IMG/VR virus record: IMGVR_UViG_3300034158_000023
Coordinates: 1 to 64,000 of that record
DNA length: 64,000 nt
Strand: one strand, 5' to 3'
In this document: piece by piece, positions 3,549 through 52,406 of the stretch
How the letters are laid out: the number at the start of each line of letters is the position of its first letter
Numbering within the stretch: position 1 is the first letter of the stretch
The notes under the pieces: model-generated
Told to the model about the DNA's origin: nothing
What the model saw: the letters and a program-made list of their open reading frames with translations, nothing else
Databases searched by the model: none
Position numbers and translations under genes: made by a program

Positions 3549-4097
3549 ATGAAAGTTAGACAGCTATTAGAATTAATCAATGTTCAACCATTATCTATAG
3601 TTAAACCAGAAGGACAACAAGTGCTGGAGCTTATTAACAAATATAGCCCTAACACTTATGACATTGTTCATTTCACTGGGTCATCTGCCTTAGAGATGAT
3701 ATCCGACTTACCACCCACAGAAGCCAACTTGATATTGGAGACAGAACTCAATGATGGATTAGATTTAACGAGTTACAGGAAAGAGTTACAGAATGTTGTA
3801 GATGGTTCTAAGTCTGGACTATCTAGAAGTATCGTTGTAGCTATTATGACGTTCTTGGTATTTGCTAGTTCCATTACCTACATCCTCTGTATGGCATACG
3901 TAAGTTACCATATGAAAACGTTACCTGGATGGACAGAGATAGCTCTACCCTTCGGTGTACCAGGTATGGTTATATGGAAATACTTCGGTATCATTAACAA
4001 AGAAAGAACTGAGCTCTTGATGGCAGCTATAGGAAGAACACCTCCTACTCCAGTAAGTGTTTTCTCTGAGGTTTCTAGGAGAGTCAGGAACGACTAA
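3549..4097 (+). CDS. membrane protein with two C-terminal TM segments
   Basis: Hydrophobic IVVAIMTFLVFASSITYILCMAYV and IALPFGVPGMVIWKYFG; GAGGA RBS. Confidence 0.75.
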   Translation: MKVRQLLELINVQPLSIVKPEGQQVLELINKYSPNTYDIVHFTGSSALEMISDLPPTEANLILETELNDGLDLTSYRKELQNVVDGSKSGLSRSIVVAIMTFLVFASSITYILCMAYVSYHMKTLPGWTEIALPFGVPGMVIWKYFGIINKERTELLMAAIGRTPPTPVSVFSEVSRRVRND

Positions 4098-4116
4098 TTC
4101 GAAATACCCCAAGATA

Positions 4117-4124
4117 TATATCAC
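4117..4124 (+). promoter_or_regulatory. early promoter variant TATATCAC
   Basis: Intergenic GATATATATCAC, followed by a 10-bp hairpin (4128-4153) and a TAAAAGGA leader. Confidence 0.65.
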
Positions 4125-4175
4125 CCTTAGGATATAGACTTAACTATATCCTATTATTCTAAAAGGAAATGTTCA

Positions 4176-5048
4176 ATGGAAGCTTCACAAAACGTTCCAG
4201 TGTCTACACCACAAATCACTACCGCAATTCAAATCAATGGTAACCAGATGGTAGCATTTGGTACAGACATCGATTGGGCTGAGTCGATGTCACTCACCGT
4301 TGAATCGCCAGATGCTGCGCAATGTATTAAGCGTGTAAGCGAATGGTTAGGCGAACTAGAGATTTACCCTTGGGGCAATTTAGCAGATTACCAAGAGTAT
4401 GCTAACCAAACTCAAGCAGCTCTAACTGACCCACTGATTTATGCACAAATCCGTGAGTATGTTTTAAATGCTCACAGCCAAGCGTTTACGTATTTGCCAA
4501 TGAACATTGGTTACTTAACCGTGGCGTTCACTTTCCGCCGTGTAGACTTAACGTTTACATTGGAAGAAGAGTCTGAAGCTGACATTCAAAATCAGATTGC
4601 TAAGGTAGAAACTGAGTTTGACTTAGATGTGCGTGAGTCAGAGCGAGCTGCTCGTGAGCAAGCAGCGAAAGCAGCGGCCAAGGAGTTTGACTTCGTCGTT
4701 AATCTGCAAAGTACCAAAATGCCGTTCTTAGTATCTGACTTCATTAACGAGGACGGTGTCCTTGTAACCAACATGAAGAAACCTGAAATGCGTGGTGAGC
4801 TTAAACAGGCTACAGTAACCGAGTTGCTCTCGTTCCTGTTAACTGTAGGGACTACCATTACAGCCCCAGATGAAACTACTACTGCCGTAGCACTAGCACA
4901 ACACGCACAAGCGTTTACTCGCCTTAAAGAGCGTTTCTTTGCTCGTGTGCCAGGTGTAGGTACTACGTTCACTGAAAACTGTGAAATCGTAGAAGTTGAT
5001 GATGACCACGGCTTGTCTATTTCAATCCGTGTTACTTTAATCGACTAA
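4176..5048 (+). CDS. acidic hypothetical early protein
   Basis: 290-aa ORF with its own promoter, strong RBS and terminator. Confidence 0.85.
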   Translation: MEASQNVPVSTPQITTAIQINGNQMVAFGTDIDWAESMSLTVESPDAAQCIKRVSEWLGELEIYPWGNLADYQEYANQTQAALTDPLIYAQIREYVLNAHSQAFTYLPMNIGYLTVAFTFRRVDLTFTLEEESEADIQNQIAKVETEFDLDVRESERAAREQAAKAAAKEFDFVVNLQSTKMPFLVSDFINEDGVLVTNMKKPEMRGELKQATVTELLSFLLTVGTTITAPDETTTAVALAQHAQAFTRLKERFFARVPGVGTTFTENCEIVEVDDDHGLSISIRVTLID

Positions 5049-5061
5049 CTATTATGGTTTA

Positions 5062-5090
5062 TAGGGAGAGGGAAACCTCTCCCTAGTTTT
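5062..5090 (+). terminator. hairpin terminator
   Basis: TAGGGAGAGG-GAAA-CCTCTCCCTA-GTTTT. Confidence 0.8.
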
Positions 5091-5102
5091 GGGGATTGTG
5101 TC

Positions 5103-5363
5103 ATGCCATTAGAATTAGAATACTGGAAAAACATAGCTGCTCTCATATTTGCTTCTTATGAGAACGTAGACTGGGATTTAATAGGGGAAGACATTAAAGT
5201 AGCTAAAAGTATGCATGAACCTTATGCAGCTGCTGAACTAGTAGTGTGGGGATTTGCTGATAAGTCTTATACCGCTAAGGTGGATAAACAGGTAATCCGT
5301 GCTAGACTTTTACATATTCAACTCAATAGTGGTTTGTTTAAAATGGTTCCACTCTCGCTCTGA
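5103..5363 (+). CDS. hypothetical protein
   Basis: 86-aa ORF with GGGGA RBS. Confidence 0.65.
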   Translation: MPLELEYWKNIAALIFASYENVDWDLIGEDIKVAKSMHEPYAAAELVVWGFADKSYTAKVDKQVIRARLLHIQLNSGLFKMVPLSL

Positions 5364-5392
5364 CATTTACCTATAATAAAAGGAATACCGAT

Positions 5393-6094
5393 ATGCGCAA
5401 GTTAAAAGATTTCTTACACATAAAACAAATGCCTTTACTGCTAGGCTTCATTGGGTACATAGTACTCTTGCATTTTATTTTCCAGAATACCTTTAACGCA
5501 GGTTACATCCTCTTCACTATCCTAGGGATGGTTGCAGTTCTTGTTATTGCAGTAGCGCAGCTCTTACCTCATGAGTTTGGCGCTGTGTGGGTTAAGGTAT
5601 CCCTATCTCGCAAACAGCTGTTAGATATCCGTAACCAAGGACATGCGGTTCCAGGGATTAACATAGTTGGACACTTTAGAAACAGTACTGAATTCTATAA
5701 CTTCTGTTACAGTCCACTAGATCAGTACACCGACGTTTACGTAAAAGTGCCAGTCTATAATTATTGTTTTGCCAGATTCGATTACGGAGTTACTGGGATT
5801 TTCTTATGGGACGTGGAAGTTAAGAAAATGATTATGGATGCTTTACGATTAGCGTTACGTAATGAGGAACCAGATCCAGAAAACCGTATTGATGTAATGG
5901 TATCACCTACCTCTTTAGAACTAGTTAAAAGCTACCCTATTGAAGTAGTGTATTGTAAAGTACCCGAAGACTACTACGGGTGGCGACAAAGCGCTCTGCG
6001 CATTATATTCACCATAGCTGCACAGATACCTATCTGGAGCTTTGCTGATATTTGGGACATGTGTAAAGAAAAAGTTGGATCATGGATAAAATAA
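5393..6094 (+). CDS. membrane protein with two N-terminal TM helices
   Basis: LLLGFIGYIVLLHFIF and YILFTILGMVAVLVIAVA; AATAAAAGGA leader. Confidence 0.8.
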   Translation: MRKLKDFLHIKQMPLLLGFIGYIVLLHFIFQNTFNAGYILFTILGMVAVLVIAVAQLLPHEFGAVWVKVSLSRKQLLDIRNQGHAVPGINIVGHFRNSTEFYNFCYSPLDQYTDVYVKVPVYNYCFARFDYGVTGIFLWDVEVKKMIMDALRLALRNEEPDPENRIDVMVSPTSLELVKSYPIEVVYCKVPEDYYGWRQSALRIIFTIAAQIPIWSFADIWDMCKEKVGSWIK

Positions 6095-6099
6095 TTTAG

Positions 6100-6132
6100 T
6101 TAGGGAGAGGTTGACTCTCCCTAATATGCCGT
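6100..6132 (+). terminator. hairpin followed by TATGCCGT
   Basis: TTAGGGAGAG/CTCTCCCTAA stem, then TATGCCGT at 6125-6132; no U-tract. Confidence 0.7.
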
Positions 6133-6160
6133 TTACCTATTAAAATAAAAGGATTCTGTA

Positions 6161-7000
6161 ATGGAACTTACTAAAATGATTTCTGATGATTATGCAGCAA
6201 CAGTAGTAGCACTTAACCAAGTGTCTAAGCATGCTACTTGTATTGAAAGAGCAATTTCTTTATATGTGGCAAAACCTTGGTTAGCCCCATTTGCTAAGTT
6301 AGATATGCCTACCATGCTGCATTTAGCTAAGGAATATTTAGTACACTGCACGATGATGAACTCAGTGTCTACAGCTAAAGCTACTGGGGATTGGTCTGAG
6401 GTTACCTATGAGGGTTACGCGTGGCTAGTAAAAACCTTTGATGAGTATTATCGCTACTCAGAGGACTCTACAGTTTACCGTAATGGCGAACTTACGGAAA
6501 TGGGGATTAGAGCCTGTAGGCTAGCTCATCCTGAATATGTGGAACTGGCTAAGGTTAAGTCGCTAGACGAGATTATCACACCTAACCCTGTTGGGGATTT
6601 CTGGAAAGCGTTAGAAGTTGCTATGCCTACTGATATCTGGTCTATGTTATTTGATCTACCTGTCCATCAGGTTGATGCAGTGTTAGAGTTGCGTTTAACT
6701 TTAGATGCGTTTGATGCAAGTACTAAGCAGCTTAAAACTCGTGCTAAGGTGCGATTCATTCACACTAAAAACACCAATAACAAAACCCCAGTGTTAGCAC
6801 TATCTGCACAACAAAAACGTTGGGTTGAAATTATACTCAGCCACCTTGATGTAATCAATACTTTACCTGACCGAGTCACCTGTCAGTTAAAGCACATTGG
6901 TTTATCTACAGTAGATGTCCCTGAAGGTGGTTCGTTCATCAAGAAAAGTGCATTAACTTGGGTTCGTAACTACGATACAGCTTGGGCGTTGATTCTGTAA
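6161..7000 (+). CDS. hypothetical protein
   Basis: 279-aa ORF with AATAAAAGGA leader. Confidence 0.8.
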   Translation: MELTKMISDDYAATVVALNQVSKHATCIERAISLYVAKPWLAPFAKLDMPTMLHLAKEYLVHCTMMNSVSTAKATGDWSEVTYEGYAWLVKTFDEYYRYSEDSTVYRNGELTEMGIRACRLAHPEYVELAKVKSLDEIITPNPVGDFWKALEVAMPTDIWSMLFDLPVHQVDAVLELRLTLDAFDASTKQLKTRAKVRFIHTKNTNNKTPVLALSAQQKRWVEIILSHLDVINTLPDRVTCQLKHIGLSTVDVPEGGSFIKKSALTWVRNYDTAWALIL

Positions 7001-7004
7001 CTTA

Positions 7005-7039
7005 ACGGCATAAGGAGGGAGCTAATGCTCCCTCCTTTT
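7005..7039. terminator. bidirectional terminator with ACGGCATA flank
   Basis: ACGGCATA + AAGGAGGGAGC-TAAT-GCTCCCTCCTT between convergent genes. Confidence 0.85.
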
Positions 7040-7638
7040 CACCGCTTTTCTAAAGCACTTATTTTTTTGTTAAGTTCTACTAGGTTAGTGTAGTACTTAG
7101 CAGATACAGCTTGACATGCAGTTAACTGTAGAACTACTTCGTCTGCTCTATCGGCTTCGGTGATAAGAAATCCAGCAGCCGCGTCCGAAAGTTCTGCTCT
7201 CTCGGTATCATCACTGAGGCCGGAGGTGGTGGCACTACCATTGGAGTCAGTATCACAACTGGTTCTAACTTTGGCTCGCTTGAGGTCGATTGACAACCGC
7301 TTATTAGCAGCAGCATACTCAGCAATAATAGCTTCAGGTTTCTTCTTCCCATCTTGTAACCCCTTTTGGTAACTTTCATCTATATGGTTAAATGCTACAT
7401 TCAGTTGATCAGCAAAATCATTAGTCAGCTTAGTAACCTCTTGTTGCAACTTCAGGTTCTTTTCCAAGTTAACTGTCTTTTCGTTTTCCAGCGCAGTTAT
7501 GATCGGTGATAACTCCATGTACTTTTCTAAGTTACCGAACGTCTTACCTAAATTATAAGCACTTGCGACCATTGCCGCAACCGCTAAGCAAATGAATATG
7601 GTCAACCAGTTGTCTTTTAAAAACTTAAGGAGTATCAT
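7039..7638 (-). CDS. Rz: i-spanin (Rz-like)
   Basis: N-terminal TM, coiled coil, C-terminal RAELS..AA.FL...A..AD....QL.ACQ typical of Rz-like proteins; start reassigned to ATG 7638 behind GAGG; contains an embedded lipoprotein gene. Confidence 0.88.
   Translation of the reverse strand: MILLKFLKDNWLTIFICLAVAAMVASAYNLGKTFGNLEKYMELSPIITALENEKTVNLEKNLKLQQEVTKLTNDFADQLNVAFNHIDESYQKGLQDGKKKPEAIIAEYAAANKRLSIDLKRAKVRTSCDTDSNGSATTSGLSDDTERAELSDAAAGFLITEADRADEVVLQLTACQAVSAKYYTNLVELNKKISALEKR
7134..7352 (-). CDS. Rz1: o-spanin lipoprotein (Rz1-like), embedded in Rz
   Basis: MGRRNLKLLLLSMLLLISG|C lipobox, Pro-rich mature part, alternative frame inside the i-spanin, AAAAGGGG RBS before ATG 7352. Confidence 0.88.
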   Translation of the reverse strand: MGRRNLKLLLLSMLLLISGCQSTSSEPKLEPVVILTPMVVPPPPASVMIPREQNFRTRLLDFLSPKPIEQTK

Positions 7639-8875
7639 CAACAGGAACCTCAATCGTTTTAGAAATAATTAAGAACCTAGCTAACGCTGGTAGTTTAGGT
7701 TCGGTAGTAACTCTATGCATTGGCGTACCAGTCCAACCAGCACGATCGGTCAGCTCAAAGGCAAACTGATCTTGTAAGTACTTAGCCGTACGAAGCACCC
7801 AACCGTTACGTTGGTCAGAGATACTATATTCAGCTATTTTACCATCACCTAGGATTAATGGGTATCTAGGTTTCGTGTAAGTGTAGTACACTCCAGGTAA
7901 CCCAGAGTATTCAACTTCCATAGTACTTACGTTCAAGTCTTTGGTATCTATCAATACAATAAAGGACTGTGATAAACTAAACCATTCTGCAATAACTGCG
8001 TCGCTCATTAAGCTAGCGTAAGCATACGTGCCATTAGGTAAAACTTCTACCTTAAGTGGCGATAGATCAATATCTTTTTTGGCTAAGTTAAAACGTTTAA
8101 CCCAGCTGTAGCGATAGAAATCAAACTTCAATACGTTATCACTAACAGCAGAATAGAGTCCATCTAGTGCGTGTAGGAAGCCACCTAACACTAGGAATGG
8201 AGTTTTGCCTGCCATGCTAACTGGTGACTTGATATAAACGCTTTCTTTATAAGACGCCGACTCAGAGCGTTTAAATAACATGCTCTTAGTTATTGGATAA
8301 CACTTAATAGCACCGATAGATTGGAAATCTAAGAGACCTACCTGAGTATCATCGCCAATACGTCCAGTCTTACAACCGTCATAAATACAGACCCCTTCAG
8401 CTACAGTATCAGCTAAGTGCACAAACCCGTTAACTGTGAATAACCCATACTTAGTTAGGTTATCTTTATTACCTGTAGGATGAGTACCATAAAGGTCTCT
8501 CTGTTGGTCCCAGGAGATATCCATATCTGGATGCATGGATCTGTTCATAGGCTTAAAACTAAAACCACAGTTCCATAACTGCAAAGACCTAACCGTTTTA
8601 TAATCTAAAGCGACCTCAGTAGGTTCTACAGGTAAAGTAGTATTACCGATAGATTGTAAATACTGCGTTAAAGTATAATGCTGGATTTTAACTTCAGGTG
8701 GCAGTTTAGCCATGTTGAGAATGAACTTACCACTTACAACCGAATGGGTTAAGGTAAGATACACACTAACGTATTTAGTGTAAATGTCAGCCATTGACAT
8801 GTTGCCAACATCAACTGGATGGTACTTACCATCTAGGTTATCTAGCAGACCTACGGCTGAAAGCATTTGATACAT
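7625..8875 (-). CDS. virion structural protein (phiKZ-like conserved)
   Basis: Start at ATG 8875 behind AAGGAG; LFTVNGFVH and PFLVLGGFLH motifs as recalled for phiKZ-like virion proteins; divergent from the tail fibre genes. Confidence 0.7.
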   Translation of the reverse strand: MYQMLSAVGLLDNLDGKYHPVDVGNMSMADIYTKYVSVYLTLTHSVVSGKFILNMAKLPPEVKIQHYTLTQYLQSIGNTTLPVEPTEVALDYKTVRSLQLWNCGFSFKPMNRSMHPDMDISWDQQRDLYGTHPTGNKDNLTKYGLFTVNGFVHLADTVAEGVCIYDGCKTGRIGDDTQVGLLDFQSIGAIKCYPITKSMLFKRSESASYKESVYIKSPVSMAGKTPFLVLGGFLHALDGLYSAVSDNVLKFDFYRYSWVKRFNLAKKDIDLSPLKVEVLPNGTYAYASLMSDAVIAEWFSLSQSFIVLIDTKDLNVSTMEVEYSGLPGVYYTYTKPRYPLILGDGKIAEYSISDQRNGWVLRTAKYLQDQFAFELTDRAGWTGTPMHRVTTEPKLPALARFLIISKTIEVPVDDTP

Positions 8876-9012
8876 AAGTAGCTCCTTCGTAAAATGATAA
8901 AATCTCTTCGGTACCACAGCTACTGTATGAGTAAGTGTCAGTACAATATAGGGAAGAAGTCGTGTTCAATTGTATGCGACCCTTTAATCTCCAAAAGTGA
9001 GGCAACCAGATT

Positions 9013-11205
9013 ATGACTCCTAAAGTTTTTACTTATCCATTCGATCCGTCTGGATTAGCATTCAGTAATAAAATCCCATCAGAATCACATACCATAACCC
9101 CGGCTAATGGTAGAGATTTTAGATTCATCGTTCCAAAAGCAGCCCCTTATTTTGCTCGCAGTATGGTAGTCAAACATCCAGGTACTGGTAAGACTTTACA
9201 GAAAGGGATTGATTGGGTTCCAGGACATCGTTTTGTTGCTGCTTCTAATACATCCCCATACCCAGAGGTTTATGGGTCTATCATACTTTTAGATAACACC
9301 TTAGATGGCACATTTAAACTAGAGCCTTATCAAACGCTGGGTGGTGAATATACCATCGATGAAACTACAGCGTTAGAAGTACTGGCTAACAAACTGTTAG
9401 ACCCACGTTTAACTACTTGGGATAAAGTTGTTGATGCGCCGTTAGTGTATGATGTACTAACTCACTTACATCACGTGAGTGGTAGTGTCGGTTATGACGC
9501 TATGGTTACAGCTTTGCAAAACTTAGTAACAGCCTTCACTTTAGAATCTTCAAAACTAAACGACCGTATCTCTGCTCATGCTGGCGACAGTTTAAACCCG
9601 CATAAGTTATCGTTGGTGCAATTAGGCATTGATCGTTTTGCTAACGTGTATCGTGAAAGTTTAGAGGCAGTGTTAAAGGGTGAAGGTAACATTAACTATG
9701 TTACTGCTTATCAGTTAGCACAAAAGATATCTAAAGAGATTGACATAGTAGGTAAGTCTGGTCAGGAAGGACAGTTAGCTTATTACACAGGTGCAGCAGC
9801 AGCCTTCAGTACGATCAGCGATTACGTTTTAAACAACGTAGCTGTAGTAGAAAATGCTGCTGATCTAACTACGCAGTTAGCCGCTCGTGAGAATTTCCTT
9901 CAGGTGTATAACTCATGGCAACGTATCGCAATGAGTGGTAACAGTCTGACTGGTACTCCAGGTGAGTTGACTGGTTGGAGTTATGACGCTGCATCAGATG
10001 CGGTGCTCAGTACTATTAACTCTAACAGTTTGATTGGGTTAGTGTGTCCTGAGCAAGTCAGTGGTGACTACGTCTTTGAAGTGGAAGTAAGTTCTACTAA
10101 TGCTGATGATGACTATATCGGTATCTCTCTGGGCTTAGCCGTTGTAGAGGGCAAGATGCGTAACTTATCTTTGCTGAGATCTGCATCTAACCCTACATCA
10201 TCAGGGGCTCCTACAGCTATTGCTAGTATGACTTTAACTTATGACTTTGGTGGTCAAGGAGCTACGGCTCTAGCTACTATTCCAGGTCTGTTAAACTACC
10301 CTAATGGTTGGGCAGGCTATACAGCAGGTGTGGTTAAGTTGCGAGTGCGCCGAGTAGGTACTGTTCTGTATATGTCTACCACTAACCCAGGTGGCGACTA
10401 TTTACCAGAAGTTGCTTATGACCTAAACTCTAAAGTGCAAACTCAAGTATTTGCTGGTGCAGTTAACTTAGGTTATGTCTCTTTCTCTCAAGCGGCAGCT
10501 AAGTGGAAAACTTTACGTAGAACAGGTGCTAACCCAGTTATCGTAGCCACTCACAACCAGCAAGTATCTGAGTGGAACGGTACTACGTATGTATTAACTG
10601 CTAAGACACCTAAAGACATTCTGAAGAAAGGTCGTTTCTATAAGAACCACCATTTCTCTCGAGTGTATTACTGTCCAGCTCCAGGCACTGTAAACATAGT
10701 CACTAATGCTATTGCCACATATGAACCTACTACTACTGCTAAGCAACGCGGTAGAGCTGCTGTGGTGTTAGACGATGGGGTTGTTTGGACTGGTCATAAG
10801 TTACAGTTAACTAGTGCTGATGGTACTCCAGCTGGTGCTATCCAAGTAACTAATGGTAAAATGGAGTTTGTTAACGCAGCTGGTCAAGTCATGGCCTACT
10901 TCGATACCAACAAACAGTTTATGCATAGTGGTTCTACCTTTATGTCTGATAAACGTTTTAAGGACATCACCCAAATGATTTCTAATAAGGGTGCATTACC
11001 TTACTACGAATGGGTGTGGAAGAAACATCCATGTGTACCAGAACATTTCTGGGGCACTAAAGGTTGGGGTGTACTAGCGCAAGATGTACAAAAAGTGCTG
11101 CCGCAGTTTGTCCATGAATCCCCAGAACACGGATTCCTTTCAGTGGACGAAACTAAACTAGCTCTATACCTGAGTTTAGTAGGTGGTTGTTCTAAGGTTG
11201 ATTAA
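9013..11205 (+). CDS. tail fibre protein with lectin-like domain and C-terminal intramolecular chaperone (peptidase S74)
   Basis: N-terminal YPFDPSG..N.I..E.H anchor shared with 15765..16418; central VEVSSTNADDDYIG; C-terminal SDKRFKDI...GVLAQDVQKVLP..V. Confidence 0.85.
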   Translation: MTPKVFTYPFDPSGLAFSNKIPSESHTITPANGRDFRFIVPKAAPYFARSMVVKHPGTGKTLQKGIDWVPGHRFVAASNTSPYPEVYGSIILLDNTLDGTFKLEPYQTLGGEYTIDETTALEVLANKLLDPRLTTWDKVVDAPLVYDVLTHLHHVSGSVGYDAMVTALQNLVTAFTLESSKLNDRISAHAGDSLNPHKLSLVQLGIDRFANVYRESLEAVLKGEGNINYVTAYQLAQKISKEIDIVGKSGQEGQLAYYTGAAAAFSTISDYVLNNVAVVENAADLTTQLAARENFLQVYNSWQRIAMSGNSLTGTPGELTGWSYDAASDAVLSTINSNSLIGLVCPEQVSGDYVFEVEVSSTNADDDYIGISLGLAVVEGKMRNLSLLRSASNPTSSGAPTAIASMTLTYDFGGQGATALATIPGLLNYPNGWAGYTAGVVKLRVRRVGTVLYMSTTNPGGDYLPEVAYDLNSKVQTQVFAGAVNLGYVSFSQAAAKWKTLRRTGANPVIVATHNQQVSEWNGTTYVLTAKTPKDILKKGRFYKNHHFSRVYYCPAPGTVNIVTNAIATYEPTTTAKQRGRAAVVLDDGVVWTGHKLQLTSADGTPAGAIQVTNGKMEFVNAAGQVMAYFDTNKQFMHSGSTFMSDKRFKDITQMISNKGALPYYEWVWKKHPCVPEHFWGTKGWGVLAQDVQKVLPQFVHESPEHGFLSVDETKLALYLSLVGGCSKVD

Positions 11206-11220
11206 AAAGAGGACTGTTTA

Positions 11221-14200
11221 ATGTCAGGTTACCTATTACGCGTAATTGACCTAGACACCATATTTGAACCTCTAGCTCCAGGGGATGCTCGTTATCCCCT
11301 GGACACTGGTTTCTTTAGTGAAAACAATGTAGATGCTAAAGACAAATACGCGCAATTAGCGCTAGGTGATCGTTACCATGAAAACGTTGGTCACGTTAGA
11401 CTAGATACTGACTTGCGTGACATTTTTGCCGCTTTAGGTTCAGTACCTCGTTTTAATCCTTTACCATGGTTAGACAATACTGGCCCTATAACTACTCCGG
11501 TAATTTATAGACAGCCATCAAGAGCACTGTTAACCAAAGTGGATTTAGCTTGCCGTATTTTAGCAGATGGCCGTTGTGAGATAACTGCACAATCCCCTGA
11601 TATCCACAGCAACCCCAATGCAAGAAAAAATGACGTGCTGTATTCATTAGCCCAACCACCGTTGTGGGATGAAGCTAAGGTGCCAGCAGGTGTAGACTTC
11701 GAAGTACGTTACGAGTTAGTTAGTGGGACTGGTTGGACTCTAGATGGGGGCATTCCTTTTGATGCATGGACCAGACTTACCGTTGGGCATCCAGGGACTA
11801 CTTTACGTGGTCAGTTAGTTTACAACCATGCTACTCAAGCTGAAGGGTCAATCGTATCTCAACCTAAAGTCAGAATACATTTACGTAGAACTGACTTCCC
11901 TAACACTAACAAAACCTCTGGGGTTATCACAGCGAATCTAACGTTGTCAGTTAATCCTAGTTTATTCATTCCTGTTAGTGCATGGACTAAAACTATTAGT
12001 AGTACTAACAATGCTGCTACTAACTATCACAATCCAGATGGTAACACTGGTAGTTTCCCTGCTAACGCCAAAGCTGAGTTTAACCTAAACGGTACTTTAA
12101 ACTTCTTCACGATGAACCACACTGGAGCATGGGTTTTAGTTTTAAGTACTAGATGGAGAAGAGATGACGCAGAGACAGCAACAACTGACTATGATGTTTT
12201 ATGTGAAGTAGTCGGCATAACGGGTGGCGGTTCATTAGGTAACCCAGTTGCTGCGTGGACTCAAGTGACGCAAGGTTATGTGATTATGTTGTCTAGTGCA
12301 GCTGCTAACAGCGCTGCTCCAGGTACATACACAGACACCCGCACCATTCGATTAAGCGTTCGTCAAAGATCTACTCGTGGTTATAGAGAAGGTGGTGCGC
12401 TGTTACCAGATAACTTTGTGTCTGGTGATTTCGTACTATCTAACACTGTGGTTGTTAAACCGCCTCTACCTTTAGAGTGGCCTAGTATTGCTGGTTGGAG
12501 TGGGGATTTCAGTGAGACTAAAACTGTTGAACTCAACCCAGGTGTATCGGGGGCGTTAAGTGAAGCCATTAGACTTACATTTGATGCCAGCGGTTCTGTG
12601 ATTGTAGGTAGCACCCAGAAACAACTAGGTAGCGGTAGTTGGTTACCGCCTGGCGTTAACCCTAGCCAAATAGAAATGCGGTCAGTAATGACGGCGTCTG
12701 GAACTGGAGCAGGACATGCTACTGGTTCTGAGTGGGATGAACTGAAAGCTAATTGGGTTTCATTTGCAGCTGGTACTAAAGTGTTGCAATCTTCTATTGC
12801 TATCACTCCAGCCGTAGGTTCAGCTTACCGACAGTATCAGGGTTCTATCCAGATGCGTAGAAAATCATATCCTAGTGATGTGGTTACTATACCTTTACGT
12901 TTATGGTCTCAGGTAGAGTATGGTGCACCACCTGCTTATCAGTGGCCTGCTACTAACTGGGCAGGGGTTAGAACTGCTAAACACTCTGTACCTTTCACAC
13001 CGGAGAACCCTAACGCTATTGCTGAAATGATTGGTATTTATTTTAGCAGTAACGGTAACGTTTCTATTAACCGTAGTGTGCATGGCTCAGCTGACAACAC
13101 TCAGTTAAGTGCTGGTAAATGGTTACCTACTGGGATTGCTGCTAGTGATGTAGAAATTTTAGTAAGTGGTAATTTCTCTGGTTCTGCTGGTGCTGATGTT
13201 AACCAATTGGGGACATGGACACAAGTTTTAACTGGCTCTAAGTATCTGATGGTACAGGTTAGTCACAACTCTGCTGTATCTGGGTTAGGGGCCTCATCTC
13301 GTAACTTTACAGGCACGATCTCATTGCGTCGTAAGTTATACCCTAGTGATGTCATTACGTTTAACGTGGATTTAACTCCCACTGCTGAAATCACTGCCCC
13401 AGTTGCTCCTAACTGGACTGGTATGACGTTACCAGATTTGGTTTACACGGTAACTAAAGACTTAGACCATTTGAGACCGAATTTGTTTGAAACTGTTATG
13501 GTTAGCTACATCATGCATTATGGTACTGGCACCTCAGCTAAGAACGTGGTAGGTCATCACCTTTACGACACTCAGATATCTGGTGCTCCGGATGGCATAG
13601 ATTCTGATATAGTGGTAGTTAACACGCGGATCACTCCAGATGGTTGGAGTCCAGCTGACTTTGAATGGTCTTTCCGTGTAATCTCTGGTAATGTGGATAA
13701 CGTTGATCCAGGGGTTTGGAAAGGGATGTCTAATGCGTCTTATAGCGTACAGTTAGGTGTTACCACTAACCACGGTATGGGTGCAGGTACTTATAAACGT
13801 TCTGGTGTTATAGCCATCGACGTTAGACGTAAAGCCTATCCTAGTCAAATGTATACGTTTACCTGTAAGTTAGAACCAACTATTGTACTTGTGCAAAATG
13901 GTCCTGCTTGGGGGATGATTACTTTACCTGACCATGCTACTACGGTTAACGCAGGTGCGGGGCAAAACTATCCAGGAGAGTCTGATGCTGACGTTTGTTC
14001 AACTGGTTACCAAATTGCTGTAAACGATAGCGGGGTAAACAGTTTCTTAAACAAACACAGTTACTATGGCTCTGATGTGGTACCAGGTAAAATTGACAAC
14101 GTTGTGGATGCTAGGTTCACTCCAAGTAACTGGGATGTGGATGACCTCGAATGGAAATATGATATTGTTTCTGAGGTAGGCGGGAAATTCCAAGCAGGGT

Positions 14201-14895
14201 ATTATCTCCCTGGTGCGGTATTGCCGCCTGGCACATGGGCTAACGTAACTGACCTGAAGTTTGTGGCGTTCTATAGTGCTAACCGCACCACTAAGAATGT
14301 GGGGGATGTTGTAACTGGCGTAGGTAAGTTGAATATATCAGTACGAGTGAAATCTCAACCAGCTTTAATGTTCACTTACCCTACTGTTACATTTACTAAC
14401 CGCATTAACTACGTTGCTCCTAATCTAACCCTGTGGCCTAGACCTGATTTTCAGAATTGGGCTGGCACTTACTATCACACCACATCTGTGGAAGTGCAAA
14501 CTTCTTACAAGAACTGGATTGGTAGTTTTCGGGGTGATACTTACGGGTTAGTGGCAGACTGGGAATTTACATTCTTTAGTGACGGGACCTGGTCCTGGGC
14601 TGGTAATGGAATGAATACTCAGCAACATGATGGACGATGGGCTGCTGCCCCAACCTCTGGTAACGATTACTCCATTAGAGCCACTGGTATAGCCACGTAT
14701 GGTTCAACGGCTACGATTAATGGTACTTGGCAGTCACTGATCGCTAAACGGATAATTACATTTTCTATTAACCGTCCGCCTGCTGGTGAACCGGATAACA
14801 ACGGTCGTTGGGCTGGCACAGTAGAAATCCGTAACAACGTTAGCGGTGAGATAATTACTGGTCAATTGGTGGTTGCAGCTACCTCACACAGATAA
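11221..14895 (+). CDS. putative tail-fibre tip adhesin with about 7 tandem beta-rich repeats
   Basis: Follows the S74 fibre; repeats of about 155-175 aa, each opening with a Pro/Trp linker and containing W(L)P and IRRK.YP-like motifs. Confidence 0.75.
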   Translation: MSGYLLRVIDLDTIFEPLAPGDARYPLDTGFFSENNVDAKDKYAQLALGDRYHENVGHVRLDTDLRDIFAALGSVPRFNPLPWLDNTGPITTPVIYRQPSRALLTKVDLACRILADGRCEITAQSPDIHSNPNARKNDVLYSLAQPPLWDEAKVPAGVDFEVRYELVSGTGWTLDGGIPFDAWTRLTVGHPGTTLRGQLVYNHATQAEGSIVSQPKVRIHLRRTDFPNTNKTSGVITANLTLSVNPSLFIPVSAWTKTISSTNNAATNYHNPDGNTGSFPANAKAEFNLNGTLNFFTMNHTGAWVLVLSTRWRRDDAETATTDYDVLCEVVGITGGGSLGNPVAAWTQVTQGYVIMLSSAAANSAAPGTYTDTRTIRLSVRQRSTRGYREGGALLPDNFVSGDFVLSNTVVVKPPLPLEWPSIAGWSGDFSETKTVELNPGVSGALSEAIRLTFDASGSVIVGSTQKQLGSGSWLPPGVNPSQIEMRSVMTASGTGAGHATGSEWDELKANWVSFAAGTKVLQSSIAITPAVGSAYRQYQGSIQMRRKSYPSDVVTIPLRLWSQVEYGAPPAYQWPATNWAGVRTAKHSVPFTPENPNAIAEMIGIYFSSNGNVSINRSVHGSADNTQLSAGKWLPTGIAASDVEILVSGNFSGSAGADVNQLGTWTQVLTGSKYLMVQVSHNSAVSGLGASSRNFTGTISLRRKLYPSDVITFNVDLTPTAEITAPVAPNWTGMTLPDLVYTVTKDLDHLRPNLFETVMVSYIMHYGTGTSAKNVVGHHLYDTQISGAPDGIDSDIVVVNTRITPDGWSPADFEWSFRVISGNVDNVDPGVWKGMSNASYSVQLGVTTNHGMGAGTYKRSGVIAIDVRRKAYPSQMYTFTCKLEPTIVLVQNGPAWGMITLPDHATTVNAGAGQNYPGESDADVCSTGYQIAVNDSGVNSFLNKHSYYGSDVVPGKIDNVVDARFTPSNWDVDDLEWKYDIVSEVGGKFQAGYYLPGAVLPPGTWANVTDLKFVAFYSANRTTKNVGDVVTGVGKLNISVRVKSQPALMFTYPTVTFTNRINYVAPNLTLWPRPDFQNWAGTYYHTTSVEVQTSYKNWIGSFRGDTYGLVADWEFTFFSDGTWSWAGNGMNTQQHDGRWAAAPTSGNDYSIRATGIATYGSTATINGTWQSLIAKRIITFSINRPPAGEPDNNGRWAGTVEIRNNVSGEIITGQLVVAATSHR

Positions 14896-14905
14896 GGAGT
14901 AACGT

Positions 14906-15754
14906 ATGTCGCGTATCATGGGCACGCACTGTAGTGTTGAATATTCTTATTACAAGGATGTTCTCATCACCATGAGCAACACACAGAAAAAACAGGCCGC
15001 CTTAATACCAACAAATGCTACTTCAAGTGACTATGAATATCAGATTTCCGCTCTGACTTCATCTGGCTCCATACTAACGTTTGGAGCCGTTAACCTCTGG
15101 TCTACATTGCCAGACTTATCTTCTTTCGATCAAAAAGCCTTGCTTTATAGCATGGAAATTAACGTAGATGAATCTGCACCCACCGGGGACACCACTTGTT
15201 GGGTGCAGTTCACTTTAACGGTAAGAAAGAAAAGTAATCACTTGGATTATGCATCTGGAGTTATTAAACTGGTACCCACGTTGAGTATAGTGGGACCTCC
15301 ACCTCCACCTCCTGGATTGTGGGCTAGCCCTGAAGGGCAGTACACATATGGGATACAGTCGTATGTGGCGGTTAACAACAACGGGGAGGCTTGGACACTT
15401 AAAGAAACCTTCTTTAATACTGATGGTACTTGGCAAGACGTTAATAACGTTAACGCTGGATTTAACCGATCTGGACGGTGGTTACCAGCCGGAGCTAATG
15501 CGGCTAACTATTCCTTACGTTGTAGGGATGTAACCACAATAATAGTTGGTAGTCAAGATGTAAACATTACCTCCGTTTGGCAGAAGGCTAACGTTAGACG
15601 GTATGTTAGAATTGAATGCAGGATTCCCAGGAATAATTCTCCGGGTACTCGTGAAACTAGATGGTACGGTATCATCGATGTCCGTAACGACCTTACTGGA
15701 GAGATTGTGTACTCTGGATGGTTATGGACTCGTGCAATTGTTACATTAACTTAA
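14906..15754 (+). CDS. adhesin-repeat protein (two repeats of the 11221..14895 family)
   Basis: FFNTDGTW..SGRW..NYSLR..RW.G.IDVRN..TGEI matches the last repeat of the upstream gene; own AAGGAG RBS. Confidence 0.75.
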   Translation: MSRIMGTHCSVEYSYYKDVLITMSNTQKKQAALIPTNATSSDYEYQISALTSSGSILTFGAVNLWSTLPDLSSFDQKALLYSMEINVDESAPTGDTTCWVQFTLTVRKKSNHLDYASGVIKLVPTLSIVGPPPPPPGLWASPEGQYTYGIQSYVAVNNNGEAWTLKETFFNTDGTWQDVNNVNAGFNRSGRWLPAGANAANYSLRCRDVTTIIVGSQDVNITSVWQKANVRRYVRIECRIPRNNSPGTRETRWYGIIDVRNDLTGEIVYSGWLWTRAIVTLT

Positions 15755-15764
15755 GAGGCCCACG

Positions 15765-16418
15765 ATGGCAGATATATTAAAATACCCAGAGGATCTAACT
15801 GGTATTAACCCTACCAACTTAGTATCCAATGAGGTTAAACTTCTACCCAGAATTAATAACCGTGGTTTTGCTCCTAGCTATGGGCCATTCTTTGCTGAGT
15901 CGTTCAAGTTATGGCATGTGGCTACTGGGAAACTGTTAGAGCCAGGGGTAGATTATCAGATTCTGGTAATGAACCAAAAAGCCACACGGGTTAGTGGCAA
16001 ATTAGTCTGTAGTTTGATCTACGTAAATAATCCTTTATACGCAGATGAGTTCCGGTATACTTACCAGACCATCGGTGATAACTGGACTATGAACGTAGAA
16101 GCCATTCAGCAGATGATTGACGCTCTACAGTTAGATGGTCGAAGCATTATCTGGGATGACATTCTAGATAAGCCTGTACTGTTCCCTCCTGCTCCTCATC
16201 TACATGACGTAGCAGACTGGTACGGTATGGAAGCAGTAGTTGACTCCATCGACAACTTAACTGAGGCTGTCAAGTATGGAGATGTGGCTTTGAAAGAACA
16301 ACTCTTAGCTCAGTTAGCTAACGTCCAAGCCCAAATTTTAGCACTACTGTCGGCCTCGACTCAAACTAACTTGGCTCTTGGTTCGTTACAAGACCGAGTT
16401 ACCACATTGGAGCAGTAA
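15765..16418 (+). CDS. short tail-fibre-family virion protein
   Basis: YPEDLTG.NPTNLV..E N-terminus and W..I.DKP..FPP..HLH motif paralogous to the N-terminus of 9013..11205. Confidence 0.75.
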   Translation: MADILKYPEDLTGINPTNLVSNEVKLLPRINNRGFAPSYGPFFAESFKLWHVATGKLLEPGVDYQILVMNQKATRVSGKLVCSLIYVNNPLYADEFRYTYQTIGDNWTMNVEAIQQMIDALQLDGRSIIWDDILDKPVLFPPAPHLHDVADWYGMEAVVDSIDNLTEAVKYGDVALKEQLLAQLANVQAQILALLSASTQTNLALGSLQDRVTTLEQ

Positions 16419-17018
16419 ATGGCAAAATTAACTAAATGGGAAATCATCAAAGACAAAACAGCTGTAGAAGCTGGTCATGTGGATGACCCTGATGACCTAG
16501 GTAAAGCTACCCATCATGGTATCACCCAAGAAACTTCATTAGAGTGGAAACACTTGTGGCCTAAGTACAACTGGAATGGTGACATGCGTACCATGCCACG
16601 TGAATTGGCTTATGAGATTTATGATTTGGGTTGGTGGCAAAGACTGGGACTGGATAGTGTGCTTATCCTCTCTGATTCGCTCGCAGAGCGCATGTTCGAC
16701 TTTGGGATTAACGCAGGTAGGGCAAATGCTGTTCGTTCGTTACAGCGCATCCTAAACGTTATGAACAAGCGTGGAAGCTTGTGGCCAGATCTTAATCCTG
16801 ATGGAGGATGGGGGGATAAGACATACCGGACGCTAGAAACGTGTTTGAGGATGTCTGATGAAAACTTAAGTAACGTTGAGTATGTGATGTTCTGCATGCA
16901 GACGTATCACTACGTAGACATCAGTGAGAAACGTGAAGCTAATGAGAAGTTCACTAACGGTTGGTTCAATCGGGTACGACGCGATTGTCGAACATACTGG
17001 CAGCGTTACTTTAGTTAG
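16419..17018 (+). CDS. endolysin, glycoside hydrolase family 108 with C-terminal peptidoglycan-binding domain
   Basis: EAGHVDDPDDLGKATHHGIT (the EGGY..P.D.GG.T..GIT motif), FDFGINAG, LQR.LN and F..GWFNR. Confidence 0.9.
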   Translation: MAKLTKWEIIKDKTAVEAGHVDDPDDLGKATHHGITQETSLEWKHLWPKYNWNGDMRTMPRELAYEIYDLGWWQRLGLDSVLILSDSLAERMFDFGINAGRANAVRSLQRILNVMNKRGSLWPDLNPDGGWGDKTYRTLETCLRMSDENLSNVEYVMFCMQTYHYVDISEKREANEKFTNGWFNRVRRDCRTYWQRYFS

Positions 17019-50774: not shown

Positions 50775-52406
50775 ATGAACCATCCGCTACCACCATTTAA
50801 CGTTTGGTTGATTACGCCTGAAACTCAAGCATTAAAATCTACAAGGTCTGTAAGGGTATTAGACACCTTTGATAGTAGTGGTAGTCTGTTCCATCCCGAC
50901 GGTTTATTTAGTGTGGAGACCTTTGGTCGTCAAGGTTCCCCAGAGCGTGATAAAACTATTTCATACGTAGCATTAAACACTACGATTTTACATCCAGAAG
51001 TATTCGTAACACTAAAAAGACTTCGTGCCTTATATATAGGCATTATAAGTGGTAAGCGTTACGCTGTCTGGAACGAAGTAGATAAAGACTTTGATCCTAG
51101 TGACAGTGCAGATGCTAAAACTGGATTTAGCTTTTTTATTTCGCATTTTCCAGATATCGTATTTAAGCGTAACAACTCAGACGTACGTAACTTACGTATT
51201 GATCTAGTAGAGAAGTATCAAAACAAAGCGTTACTGACTAACCATTTGATTTTACCAGCTGGTTTACGTGATGCTTATGTAGCCCCTGATGGACAAGTAT
51301 CTGAAGATGAGATCAACGATCTTTATCGTAAACTGATTTCTACTTCGACTACTATATCTAACTTAGAAGAAAACAAAAACTCTCCTAACTTGGATACTTC
51401 AAGATGGTCTTTACAGTTAACTGCTAACTCTATCTTTGAGTATATCGTTAAACTTCAGATCTCTGGTAAGCGTGGATGGTTCCAACAGAAGTTTGGTAGC
51501 CGTAAGACTCGTAACGGCTCTGCAAGTGTTATCACTGCTATGACTACAGCTGTGCCTATGTTGGGTGCTCCTAGTGCTATATCAGTGACTGATACTGAGA
51601 TTGGTTTACTCCAGACTTTACGTAACAACATCCCTGAAGTAATCGGCTTATTAAAGCGTAATTGTTTTTCTAGGATCTTCAGTGAACAAGCTAGTGAAGC
51701 ATGGCTGATTAACCCTAAAACCTTACAACGAGAATTAGTAAACGTTTCCACCTATACGATGGACTTGTTTACCACGAACGAGGGGATAAACAAATTCGTT
51801 AACAGGTTCTTCCTAAGGGATATTCGTAATAACCCGGTCTTAGTAGAAAAACATTACTTAGGCTTAGTATATGTAGACAAACATAATTTTAAGTTGTTTT
51901 ATGACATTAACGAGTTACCTGAGCATTTGGATAAGTCTAATGTTTCTCCTGCTACGTTAGCTGACATATTACATTTAACTACGTATCAAGCTTTGAAATC
52001 AGCTTGTGGGACTATCACTCGTTATCCTATCACGGGTGACGGTTCTATTTACCCCACGTTTTATAAAACCAGAACAACCACTCTGACTAAATCTTTAATC
52101 CCCTTAGGGGATGATTGGCAACCTGTAACTGAGGAAGTGTGTTATAACTTCCACGACCGCAGTTCTAATGCAGAATGGATAGACAGTTTAACTCCTCACA
52201 TCACCAGACTTGTAGGTTTGGGTGCTGACTTTGACGGAGATAAAAACAACTCTCCTTCTGTTAATACCAAAGAAGCAAAAGCTGAAGTGAAGGCATACTT
52301 CTCTAAGAAAACTTCTTTCGTGGGTGCCAACGGTAGACTTTTAGTTTCAACCACAATCGATACTGTGGAACTGGTAGTTCGCAATTTAACAGGTGACGCA
52401 GAATGA
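50775..52406 (+). CDS. virion RNA polymerase beta-prime subunit, catalytic part (phiKZ gp180-like)
   Basis: DGLFSVETFG, LPAGLR, SGKRG, TRYP and catalytic GADFDGD. Confidence 0.93.
   Translation: MNHPLPPFNVWLITPETQALKSTRSVRVLDTFDSSGSLFHPDGLFSVETFGRQGSPERDKTISYVALNTTILHPEVFVTLKRLRALYIGIISGKRYAVWNEVDKDFDPSDSADAKTGFSFFISHFPDIVFKRNNSDVRNLRIDLVEKYQNKALLTNHLILPAGLRDAYVAPDGQVSEDEINDLYRKLISTSTTISNLEENKNSPNLDTSRWSLQLTANSIFEYIVKLQISGKRGWFQQKFGSRKTRNGSASVITAMTTAVPMLGAPSAISVTDTEIGLLQTLRNNIPEVIGLLKRNCFSRIFSEQASEAWLINPKTLQRELVNVSTYTMDLFTTNEGINKFVNRFFLRDIRNNPVLVEKHYLGLVYVDKHNFKLFYDINELPEHLDKSNVSPATLADILHLTTYQALKSACGTITRYPITGDGSIYPTFYKTRTTTLTKSLIPLGDDWQPVTEEVCYNFHDRSSNAEWIDSLTPHITRLVGLGADFDGDKNNSPSVNTKEAKAEVKAYFSKKTSFVGANGRLLVSTTIDTVELVVRNLTGDAE

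What the first reader, a model, noticed from the sequence alone, without database searches (positions are those of the whole stretch)
11221..15754. Seven-repeat tip adhesin plus a separate two-repeat companion gene
Seen: after a ~80-aa N-terminal module (GY....DLD.IF...TGF...YA.L..G....VGH....DL.DIFAA.GS) the protein has diverged repeats starting near nt 11461, 11977, 12475, 12940, 13411, 13906 and 14431. Repeats 3/4 and 5/6 are pairwise closer (GSWLPPG/GKWLPTG and RRKSYPSDV/RRKLYPSDV; W..(M/I)TLPD and R(I/F)TP..W). The next gene lacks the N-terminal module, starts within a repeat and ends in a repeat most like repeat 7. Inference: a gp38-style separately encoded tip that docks on the chaperone-cleaved fibre and grows by duplication. 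The second gene may be a spare C-terminal cassette for recombinational host-range change, a second subunit, or a soluble receptor blocker.
Basis: partly seen in the sequence, partly recalled or inferred. Interest (0 to 1): 0.6.

Follow-up and report, generated by a model that had tools for sequence, protein, structure and literature searches.

The report
Multi-domain tail-fibre tip protein with companion
A jumbo phage encodes, just after a self-cleaving tail fibre, a 1224-aa protein made of a small docking module and seven beta-sandwich domains, plus a two-domain companion; both belong to a widespread, unstudied phage family that probably sets host range.

Summary
Gene 11221-14895 (1224 aa) has a conserved N-terminal module of about 76 aa and seven homologous domains of 150-175 aa. 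Gene 14906-15754 (282 aa) has one repeat lacking its first strand, a poly-proline linker, and a full repeat closest to repeat 7.

AlphaFold2 folds repeat 4 as an Ig-like beta-sandwich (pLDDT 94) with no close PDB relative. No part matches Pfam or NCBIfam. The only named family is PHROG 11610 (function unknown), which equals the N-module plus one domain.

Three findings are new:
- The N-module is itself three repeats of about 25 aa.
- Genes carrying it lie just downstream of a tail-fibre gene ending in an S74-type self-cleaving chaperone. This holds for 32 of 35 IMG/VR clusters, and for every other context examined (sipho-, myo- and jumbo phages).
- Domain number ranges from 1 to 8, and some giant fibres carry 6-12 domains fused directly.

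Among close relatives one block (repeats 6-7 plus the first companion domain) is replaced as a unit.

The best reading is a separately encoded distal receptor-binding extension of the fibre, with the companion as a co-varying second subunit. It works like gp38 but is not a gp38 relative. Docking is inferred only. The "spare cassette" idea is not supported.

The parts
9013..11205 (+). Tail fibre (730 aa). It has an N-terminal baseplate-anchor domain (phrog_2163 type), a body, and a C-terminal S74 intramolecular chaperone.
   Evidence: PHROG tail-fibre and virion-structural families; Pfam Peptidase_S74 at 29.3 bits against a cut-off of 22, aa 645-700. tblastn finds relatives in phiKZ-like jumbo phages.
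10945..11205 (+). S74-type self-cleaving chaperone domain of the fibre (aa 645-730). It begins with the Ser-x4-Lys motif SDKRFK, the presumed cleavage site.
   Evidence: Actual cleavage is inferred from what is known of the S74 family.
11221..11448 (+). N-terminal module of the 1224-aa protein (aa 1-76). It consists of three internal ~25-aa repeats of the type G-x4-G-V-D-L-x2-L-F/Y-x-P and is the presumed docking adaptor.
   Evidence: Conserved alignments A2 and A5. Internal repeats by hhalign, 89-95%. Matches phrog_11610 positions 3-72.
11449..11967 (+). Repeat 1 (aa 77-249), beta-sandwich domain. Its position is conserved in all relatives.
11965..12471 (+). Repeat 2 (aa 249-417).
12478..12936 (+). 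Repeat 3 (aa 420-572), of the 'R3/4' type.
12943..13407 (+). Repeat 4 (aa 575-729), of the 'R3/4' type. This is the repeat that was folded.
   Evidence: AlphaFold2 pLDDT 94.1, pTM 0.87, eight-strand beta-sandwich. phrog_11610 hit at aa 603-704, E 3e-13.
13399..13899 (+). Repeat 5 (aa 727-893), of the 'R5/6' type.
13891..14427 (+). Repeat 6 (aa 891-1069), of the 'R5/6' type. The hypervariable block starts here.
14440..14892 (+). Repeat 7 (aa 1074-1224), the terminal type, hypervariable.
14906..15754 (+). Companion protein (282 aa). It has domain C1 (aa 2-135, lacking the first strand), a poly-Pro linker (aa 131-136, nt 15296-15313), and domain C2 (aa 133-282, closest to repeat 7). Its own Shine-Dalgarno site AAGGAG lies at 14894-14899.
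   Evidence: (AlphaFold2 pLDDT 86, two beta-sandwiches).
13920..15200 (+). Mosaic hypervariable block: repeats 6-7 plus the first ~100 aa of the companion, replaced as one unit between close relatives.
   Evidence: Window against L008: 94% identity over aa 1-900 of the large protein, then 32-52%. The companion is 52-72% over aa 1-100, then 90-94%. Contigs of relatives from other metagenomes leave the reference in the same block.
15765..16418 (+). Anchor-only protein (217 aa). It is a paralogue of the fibre's N-terminal 190 aa and has no distal part. It is conserved in the block in all relatives whose contig covers the position, and its partner is unknown.
   Evidence: phrog_2163 positions 7-205, E 7e-55. 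BLASTP against the fibre N-terminus gives 27% identity, E 2e-20. Synteny.

Best explanation
The 1224-aa protein is a separately encoded distal extension of the upstream tail fibre. It is probably the phage's main host-specificity element.

Shown:
- The fibre (9013-11205) ends in an S74 self-cleaving chaperone.
- The next gene starts with a conserved 76-aa module made of three ~25-aa repeats, followed by seven Ig-like beta-sandwich domains.
- The same module-plus-domain family (PHROG 11610) sits right after S74-terminated fibre genes in many unrelated phages.
- Domain number varies from 1 to 8.
- The last two domains and the first companion domain form one hypervariable, exchangeable block.

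Inferred:
- After the fibre trimer folds and sheds its three chaperone domains, one copy of the protein docks on the exposed tip. Its three N-module repeats each contact one fibre chain, giving a three-fold to one-fold adaptor.
- The seven domains then form a flexible string of roughly 30 nm, and its far end (repeats 6-7) contacts the receptor.
- The 282-aa companion, which has no docking module, binds that far end as a second subunit through its first domain. This would explain why the two vary together.
For: 1. Repeats are real and share one fold.
2. The N-module is the best-conserved part of the protein (94% against 32-52% distally). That is expected of an attachment site. It has three-fold internal symmetry.
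3. The gene pairing 'S74-fibre then N-module gene' recurs widely:
   - the window lineage (nine loci)
   - a lambda-like siphovirus, L009
   - four myoviruses, L010-L013, including a P2-like phage
   - Xanthomonas phage FoX1 and jumbo phage LucasX
   - 32 of 35 clusters among 80 IMG/VR loci
   In that sample Ser and Lys of the S-x4-K dyad are nearly invariant. Thirteen of 34 pass Pfam S74 at E <= 0.01. The rest are homologous to S74 by hhalign, 95%, E 2e-8.
4. Fusion proteins support a distal place on a fibre. Giants of 2600-3100 aa carry 6-11 of these domains directly behind a T4 gp34-like fibre shaft.
5. The large protein and the companion diverge faster than their neighbours: 81/82, 71/68 and 46/53% identity against 95, 89 and 65% for the fibre.
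6. One replaced block spans repeats 6-7 and companion domain 1.
7. All four genes are tightly packed, each with its own ribosome-binding site.
Against: - There is no direct evidence that either protein is in the virion or binds the fibre.
- The single complex prediction (three fibre tips plus N-module/repeat 1) gave no answer.
- The IMG/VR sample is not phylogenetically independent. One cluster holds 38 of the 80 loci.
- No background frequency of S74 fibres was computed.
- FoX1 has an 87-aa ORF consisting of the N-module alone. The module may therefore have a role of its own, such as a cap or assembly factor, rather than only anchoring a payload.
- A second possible anchor, the 217-aa stub, lies in the same block.
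- The fold is a generic Ig-like sandwich (best PDB Z 6.2), which says nothing about the ligand.
Confidence: 0.55

Rival explanations
1. The N-module family is a fibre-tip cap or assembly factor, a functional analogue of Tfa, P2 gpG or Mu gpU that stays on or transiently covers the tip. The beta-sandwich array would be an accessory decoration and not the primary receptor binder.
For: The single-domain members occupy the gene position of tail-fibre assembly proteins; in the P2-like locus L012 this is right after the H-like fibre. FoX1 has an ORF with the N-module alone. LucasX joins the module to a different C-terminal part.
Against: The partner fibres already carry their own intramolecular chaperone. 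There is no match to Caudo_TAP or any Pfam/NCBIfam model. Arrays of up to 8 domains with a hypervariable distal end, and fusion to fibre shafts, are hard to explain for a chaperone.
Confidence: 0.15
2. The 1224-aa protein, the companion or both dock on the 217-aa anchor-only protein and not on the 730-aa fibre. That would form a second, split fibre on the baseplate.
For: The stub has the baseplate-anchor domain but no distal part. It is conserved in the block wherever the contig covers it. Its C-terminal ~65 aa are also variable between close relatives, 68-82% against 96-100%.
Against: In the five outside contexts whose neighbouring genes were listed (L009-L013) there is no such stub, while an S74 fibre lay upstream in every outside context examined. 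The N-module is conserved between the window and L008 (94%), where the stub's C-terminus is not. This argument does not apply to the companion, so a stub-companion pair remains open.
Confidence: 0.15
3. The proteins are not fibre parts. They might be a Hoc-like surface decoration of the capsid or tail that binds environmental polymers, or soluble proteins released at lysis that block receptors.
For: Strings of Ig-like domains on phages are often decorations (established knowledge of T4 Hoc). The companion has no docking module. Lysis genes flank the block.
Against: The linkage to fibre genes holds across unrelated phages. Fusions to fibre shafts exist. Neither protein has a visible signal-peptide-like N-terminus.
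Confidence: 0.08
4. The companion gene is a silent spare cassette for recombinational replacement of the C-terminal repeat.
For: Its second domain is the closest relative of repeat 7.
Against: It has its own AAGGAG ribosome-binding site 6 nt before the ATG. It is an intact ORF of conserved length (265-300 aa) in all nine syntenic relatives, down to 26% identity. Only 30% amino-acid identity to repeat 7 remains, and there is no DNA repeat longer than 23 nt between them. Companion-like two-domain proteins form 22 separate clusters of their own.
Confidence: 0.03

Closest known systems
PHROG 11610 (phage protein family of unknown function, profile of about 219 aa)
   Same: Its profile is exactly the N-module (positions 3-72) plus one beta-sandwich domain (positions 82-199). 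The window's proteins and the single-domain relatives all match it.
   Different: Typical members have one domain and are 205-230 aa long. The window protein has seven domains and a module-less two-domain companion. No function has been recorded for the family.
T-even gp38 adhesins (T2, T6 and S16 type)
   Same: Both are encoded separately just downstream of the distal fibre gene. The presumed working is the same: an N-terminal attachment part on a trimeric fibre tip and a hypervariable distal part that sets host range. The description of gp38 is established knowledge, not tested here.
   Different: There is no sequence match. The fold is an Ig-like beta-sandwich array, not gp38's polyglycine sandwich. 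The protein is much larger and modular, and it has an added companion subunit.
Tail-fibre assembly proteins Tfa, P2 gpG and Mu gpU (Pfam Caudo_TAP)
   Same: They hold the same gene position after the fibre gene. Mu-type Tfa also remains bound to the fibre tip (cited in PMC11990801).
   Different: There is no Caudo_TAP match. The partner fibres here fold with their own S74 chaperone.
Branched receptor-binding systems in which one protein docks on another through an N-terminal adaptor (DT57C LtfA/LtfB, G7C gp66 on gp63.1, CBA120 tailspikes)
   Same: They use the same principle: a conserved N-terminal docking module carries an exchangeable distal payload.
   Different: Those partners are trimers that dock on trimers. 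Here the adaptor is a three-repeat module within one chain, which suggests one chain per trimer. There is no sequence relation.
Separately encoded chaperone 'caps' of Alteromonas phages V22 and A5 (PMC10579305)
   Same: A small protein is encoded after the fibre gene and is proposed to sit on the fibre tip.
   Different: Those chaperones resemble the intramolecular chaperone domain itself and replace it. Here the fibre keeps its own chaperone and the downstream protein is something else.
Chaperone-usher pilins and fimbrial adhesins (CfaB, CooA, FimH/F17-G); ASH/PapD-like domains
   Same: These are the best, though weak, structural neighbours: Ig-like sandwiches arranged in strings.
   Different: Z is at most 6.2 and TM at most 0.34, which is within the range of chance for common folds. 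There is no evidence of donor-strand exchange.

Membership tests
PHROG 11610 | Match to the family profile covering the N-module and/or the beta-sandwich domain | tested here: met
   P0001 E 3.3e-13 (aa 603-704 on profile 100-199) and P0002 E 3.5e-5. The N-module of the related L009 gene matches profile positions 3-72. Single-domain relatives cover 1-216 of 219 positions, E 1.7e-57.
T-even gp38 adhesin | Sequence similarity to gp38 or a curated model for it | tested here: not met
   No Pfam, NCBIfam or PDB sequence match for any part.
T-even gp38 adhesin | Polyglycine type II sandwich with glycine-rich motifs separating hypervariable segments | tested here: not met
   The AlphaFold2 models are ordinary beta-strand sandwiches. 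No glycine-rich motifs appear in the sequence.
T-even gp38 adhesin | Encoded directly downstream of the distal fibre gene | tested here: met
   There is a 15-nt gap after the fibre's stop codon.
T-even gp38 adhesin | Binds the tip of the trimeric fibre and the receptor | tested here: inconclusive
   The complex prediction gave no answer. Receptor binding cannot be tested with these tools.
Tail fibre assembly protein (Caudo_TAP / Tfa) | Match to the Caudo_TAP model | tested here: not met
   No Pfam hit for P0001, P0002 or ten family members, even at E <= 1.
Peptidase_S74 intramolecular chaperone (applies to the upstream fibre) | Pfam PF13884 above the gathering score at the C-terminus | tested here: met
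   29.3 bits against a cut-off of 22, aa 645-700.
Peptidase_S74 intramolecular chaperone (applies to the upstream fibre) | Ser-x4-Lys catalytic dyad at the start of the domain | tested here: met
   SDKRFK at aa 645-650. Ser and Lys are nearly invariant in 34 partner fibres.
Peptidase_S74 intramolecular chaperone (applies to the upstream fibre) | Autocleavage and release after trimerisation | not testable with these tools
   Needs expression of the wild type against a Ser645 mutant.
Curated Ig-like domain families (Big, PKD, FN3, Hoc-type) | Sequence match to a curated Ig-like model | tested here: not met
   No Pfam hit. The only trace is Big_9 at E 0.18 in one distant family member.
Curated Ig-like domain families (Big, PKD, FN3, Hoc-type) | Ig-like beta-sandwich fold | tested here: inconclusive
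   The domain is a two-sheet sandwich, but the best Z is 6.2 (ASH/PapD-like) and 4.5-4.9 for pilins, Big and PKD. That is within the range of common arrangements.
Chaperone-usher pilins | Incomplete Ig fold completed by a donor strand from the next subunit | tested here: inconclusive
   The companion's first domain lacks strand A, yet it folds with pLDDT above 90 on its own. No spare strand is seen at the C-terminus of repeat 7. The fold similarity is weak.

The most novel reading that the evidence does not exclude
The three-repeat N-module may be a general, so far undescribed docking device. One chain with three-fold internal symmetry would take the place vacated by the three released S74 chaperone domains on a trimeric fibre tip. 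It would convert three-fold into one-fold symmetry and allow any payload to be plugged on: 1-8 beta-sandwich domains, or other domains as in LucasX. This would be a second layer of modular host-range exchange shared by sipho-, myo- and jumbo phages. The window's phage would be an extreme case, with a seven-domain arm and a co-evolving second subunit.
Probability: 0.35. Interest if true: 0.75.

Novelty: new variant of a known kind. Interest (0 to 1): 0.6.

Why it matters
Fibres that end in S74 chaperone domains are usually read as complete receptor-binding proteins once the chaperone is shed. If a further protein regularly docks on them, host-range prediction and receptor-binding-protein engineering for many phages are looking at the wrong tip.

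The family is large: at least 567 clusters at 50% identity. It has no curated model. It offers a simple, testable design of a conserved adaptor plus 1-8 exchangeable domains. The window's phage shows the expansion, the natural cassette exchange at the distal end, and a companion subunit in one place, which makes it a good system for experiments.

Tried and rejected
Searches that found nothing:
- megablast of 9000-16500 and tblastn of the 1224-aa protein against 50,697 phage records gave no match.
- IMG/VR scans with the two whole proteins gave no relatives. The relatives came from the word search and its Logan contigs.
- Pfam and NCBIfam gave nothing for any part of either protein or for family members.
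- PDB sequence profiles of the repeat and of the N-module gave nothing below E 0.4.
- Foldseek and VIA against the PDB gave only generic Ig-like neighbours. The ESM Atlas gave only unnamed phage clusters and generic sandwiches.
- Literature searches found no paper on this family. The Alteromonas 'chaperone cap' system is a different thing. The LucasX paper has no virion proteomics.

Complex prediction of three copies of the fibre tip (aa 501-644) with N-module plus repeat 1 gave no answer (score 0.04, mark 0.32). It is not evidence either way.

Ideas considered and dropped:
- Read-through or frameshift fusion of the two genes. They are in different frames, I saw no slippery site in the 10-nt gap, and the companion has its own strong ribosome-binding site.
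- Donor-strand completion of the companion's first domain. No supporting feature was found.
- Recent tandem duplication. DNA similarity between the repeats is almost gone.

Caveats:
- The E-values are circular, because the HMM was trained on the same domains. They were used only for domain boundaries.
- Read laying was given 5,601 letters.

Full report
**Setting**

The window is the first 64 kb of a 215,386-bp virus record with direct terminal repeats. Its fibre and an RNA-polymerase beta-like protein (52403-56608) find only distant relatives, about 35% identity. These are phiKZ-like jumbo phages of Xanthomonas, Erwinia, Serratia, Klebsiella and Pseudomonas. The run that holds the whole stretch is a peat metagenome and may be the source of this DNA.

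Around the finding the + strand carries a tight block:
- fibre, 9013-11205 (730 aa)
- large protein, 11221-14895 (1224 aa)
- companion, 14906-15754 (282 aa)
- a 217-aa protein, 15765-16418
- a GH108/PG_binding_3 endolysin, 16419-17018

Upstream on the minus strand lie a 430-aa protein (phrog_3337) and an Rz-like spanin. The first four genes of the block each have their own Shine-Dalgarno site, and the gaps between them are 10-15 nt.

**The observation**

The repeats are real.
- An HMM from R3-R7 alone recovers R1 (weakly), R2 and two domains in the companion.
- Profile-profile comparison of orthologue groups does not reuse training data. It links every class to the R3/4 type at 93-97% probability, and the terminal repeat to the companion's second domain at 99.7% (E 1e-25).
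- The companion's first domain begins at profile position 26 of 150, so it lacks the first strand.
- At the DNA level only a 34-nt patch remains alike between repeats. The duplications are therefore old.

**Fold**

With an alignment of 61 repeats, AlphaFold2 folds repeat 4 as an eight-strand beta-sandwich (pLDDT 94.1, pTM 0.87). The companion folds as two such sandwiches joined by a poly-proline linker (pLDDT 86).

The PDB holds no close relative. The best match is Z 6.2 to ASH/PapD-like domains, and Z 4.5-5 to pilins, fimbrial lectin domains, Big, PKD and cadherin domains. Such values are common for unrelated sandwiches. Among predicted viral structures the good matches are unnamed phage proteins (TM 0.69-0.72). 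Pfam, NCBIfam and PDB sequence searches find nothing.

**The family**

PHROG 11610 (function unknown) matches one repeat of the large protein and one of the companion. Its profile turns out to be the N-module plus one domain.

A profile of the 61 repeats, searched against 1.84 billion representative proteins, finds 567 clusters at E <= 0.001. Among the best 150:
- 28 clusters have the N-module plus one domain (205-230 aa)
- 22 have the N-module plus 2-8 domains
- 22 are companion-like two-domain proteins without the module (265-313 aa)
- several are giants of 2350-5174 aa

Four giants of 2600-3100 aa carry 6-11 domains at their C-terminal end. In the two scanned against PHROGs, the N-terminal part is a T4 gp34-like fibre shaft (phrog_972). 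These fusions place the domain array on the far side of a fibre.

**The N-module**

Residues 1-76 are the best-conserved part of the protein among relatives. Aligned with single-domain members, the module resolves into three units of about 25 aa, each of the type G-x4-G-V-D-L-x2-L-F/Y-x-P. The three units are homologous to each other (hhalign 89-95%, E 2e-6 to 2e-8). A single chain with three like units is what one would expect of an adaptor that sits on a three-fold symmetric partner. This is an inference.

**What it sits next to**

The fibre upstream passes the Pfam gathering score for Peptidase_S74, and the domain starts with SDKRFK at aa 645. Every other context examined shows the same pairing:
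- A high-GC lambda-like siphovirus (L009). After the tape measure and J-like genes comes a 363-aa fibre with S74. The module gene follows it, starting 4 nt before the fibre ORF ends.
- Four myoviruses (L010-L013), one of them P2-like, where the gene sits where gpG normally lies.
- Xanthomonas phage FoX1, where an 87-aa ORF with the module alone starts at the fibre's stop codon.
- Jumbo phage LucasX, where an S74 fibre (LUCX_307) is followed by a 448-aa protein with a diverged module and a different C-terminal part.

A scan of IMG/VR gave 80 loci in 35 clusters. In 28 clusters the ORF directly upstream carries S-x4-K about 85-125 aa from its end. In four more it does so after one small intervening gene. 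Three are unresolved.

In the alignment of these C-termini Ser and Lys are nearly invariant. Thirteen of 34 pass Pfam S74 at E <= 0.01. The remaining 'GSSRKLK...PYGL' type is homologous to the S74 type (hhalign 95%, E 2e-8).

The sample is not phylogenetically independent, since one cluster holds 38 loci, and no background rate was computed. Even so, the pairing spans very different tail types.

**Variation among relatives**

Nine further loci share the block of fibre, large protein, companion, stub and endolysin, as far as each contig reaches. The large protein has 4, 5, 6, 7 or 8 domains.

Positions 1 and 2 and the terminal domain are orthologous throughout. The changes are in the middle: L004 and L006 have four R3/4-type domains where the window has two. 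So the gene order is fixed while the repeat number is not.

The large protein and the companion diverge faster than their neighbours. Between the window and its closest relative (L008):
- identity is about 94% over aa 1-900 of the large protein
- it drops to 32-52% over repeats 6-7
- it stays low (52-72%) over the first 100 aa of the companion
- it returns to 90-94% after that

For repeat 6 the otherwise more distant L005 is the closer one (82% against 48%). The block has therefore been exchanged. Low-depth contigs of relatives from food and freshwater metagenomes follow the reference elsewhere but leave it between about 13.9 and 15.4 kb.

**Reading**

The protein most likely works like a gp38-type adhesin, without being related to one. 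It would be a separately made distal piece that docks on the matured fibre and carries the specificity at its far end. The companion would be a second subunit bound there, which explains the joint exchange of repeats 6-7 and companion domain 1.

Docking, stoichiometry, virion presence and receptor binding are all inferred. The one complex prediction gave no answer and counts for nothing.

Rivals:
- a cap or assembly role for the module, supported by FoX1's module-only ORF and the gpG-like position
- docking on the 217-aa stub, which cannot be excluded for the companion
- a role off the fibre

The 'spare cassette' reading is rejected. The companion has its own AAGGAG site and intact, length-conserved orthologues down to 26% identity. 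It has no DNA homology to repeat 7.

**Novelty**

The kind, a separately encoded fibre-tip protein, is known. The family, its three-repeat adaptor, its regular pairing with S74 fibres, its 1-8-domain scaling and the companion subunit are, as far as the libraries and papers searched here show, undescribed. I rate it a new variant of a known kind, with interest 0.6.

Noticed in passing
window 15765-16418 (+): A 217-aa protein is a paralogue of only the N-terminal anchor (about 190 aa) of the 730-aa fibre. It has no distal part. It is conserved after the companion in all relatives whose contig reaches that far. What it carries is unknown; the companion, which lacks a docking module, is a candidate.
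   Followed up: partly
window about 16215-16570 (end of the 217-aa gene and start of the endolysin gene): A second, smaller mosaic patch between the window and its closest relative. The stub's aa 151-217 are 68-82% identical and the endolysin's aa 1-50 are 80%, against 96-100% beside them.
   Followed up: no
L014 (Xanthomonas phage FoX1, MT161381.1) 4001-4264: An unannotated 87-aa ORF consisting of the N-module alone starts at the stop codon of tail fibre gp17. The deposited gp18 CDS (4056-4358) overlaps it in another frame. It may be a mis-annotation, a degraded gene or a minimal family member.
   Followed up: partly
L013 6627-7001; L021, L022, L044, L049 (ORFs just upstream of the module gene): In some myoviruses a small gene of about 115-125 aa (phrog_25696, function unknown) is inserted between the S74 fibre gene and the N-module gene.
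   Followed up: no
proteins P0013, P0018, P0023, P0026 (2600-3100 aa) and P0068 (5174 aa): Giant proteins carry 6-11 of these domains. In the two scanned (P0013, P0018) the array sits behind a T4 gp34-like fibre shaft. P0068 shows 12 partial matches at an exact 339-aa period, which points to a very recent tandem array.
   Followed up: partly
window 7039-8917 (-) and 16419-17018 (+): Lysis genes flank the fibre block: an Rz-like spanin on the minus strand and a GH108/PG_binding_3 endolysin on the plus strand. A conserved 430-aa protein of unknown function (phrog_3337) lies between the spanin and the fibre. LucasX has a 'virion structural' gene at the same place.
   Followed up: no
window 15295-15312: The only tandem DNA repeat in the region is ACCTCC x3. 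It encodes the poly-proline linker between the companion's two domains.
   Followed up: yes
L015 (jumbo phage LucasX, MW825358.1) 4868-8332: LUCX_307 (702 aa) ends in an S74 domain. LUCX_306 (448 aa) begins with a diverged N-module, but its remainder does not match the beta-sandwich profile. The adaptor therefore seems to carry other payloads as well.
   Followed up: partly
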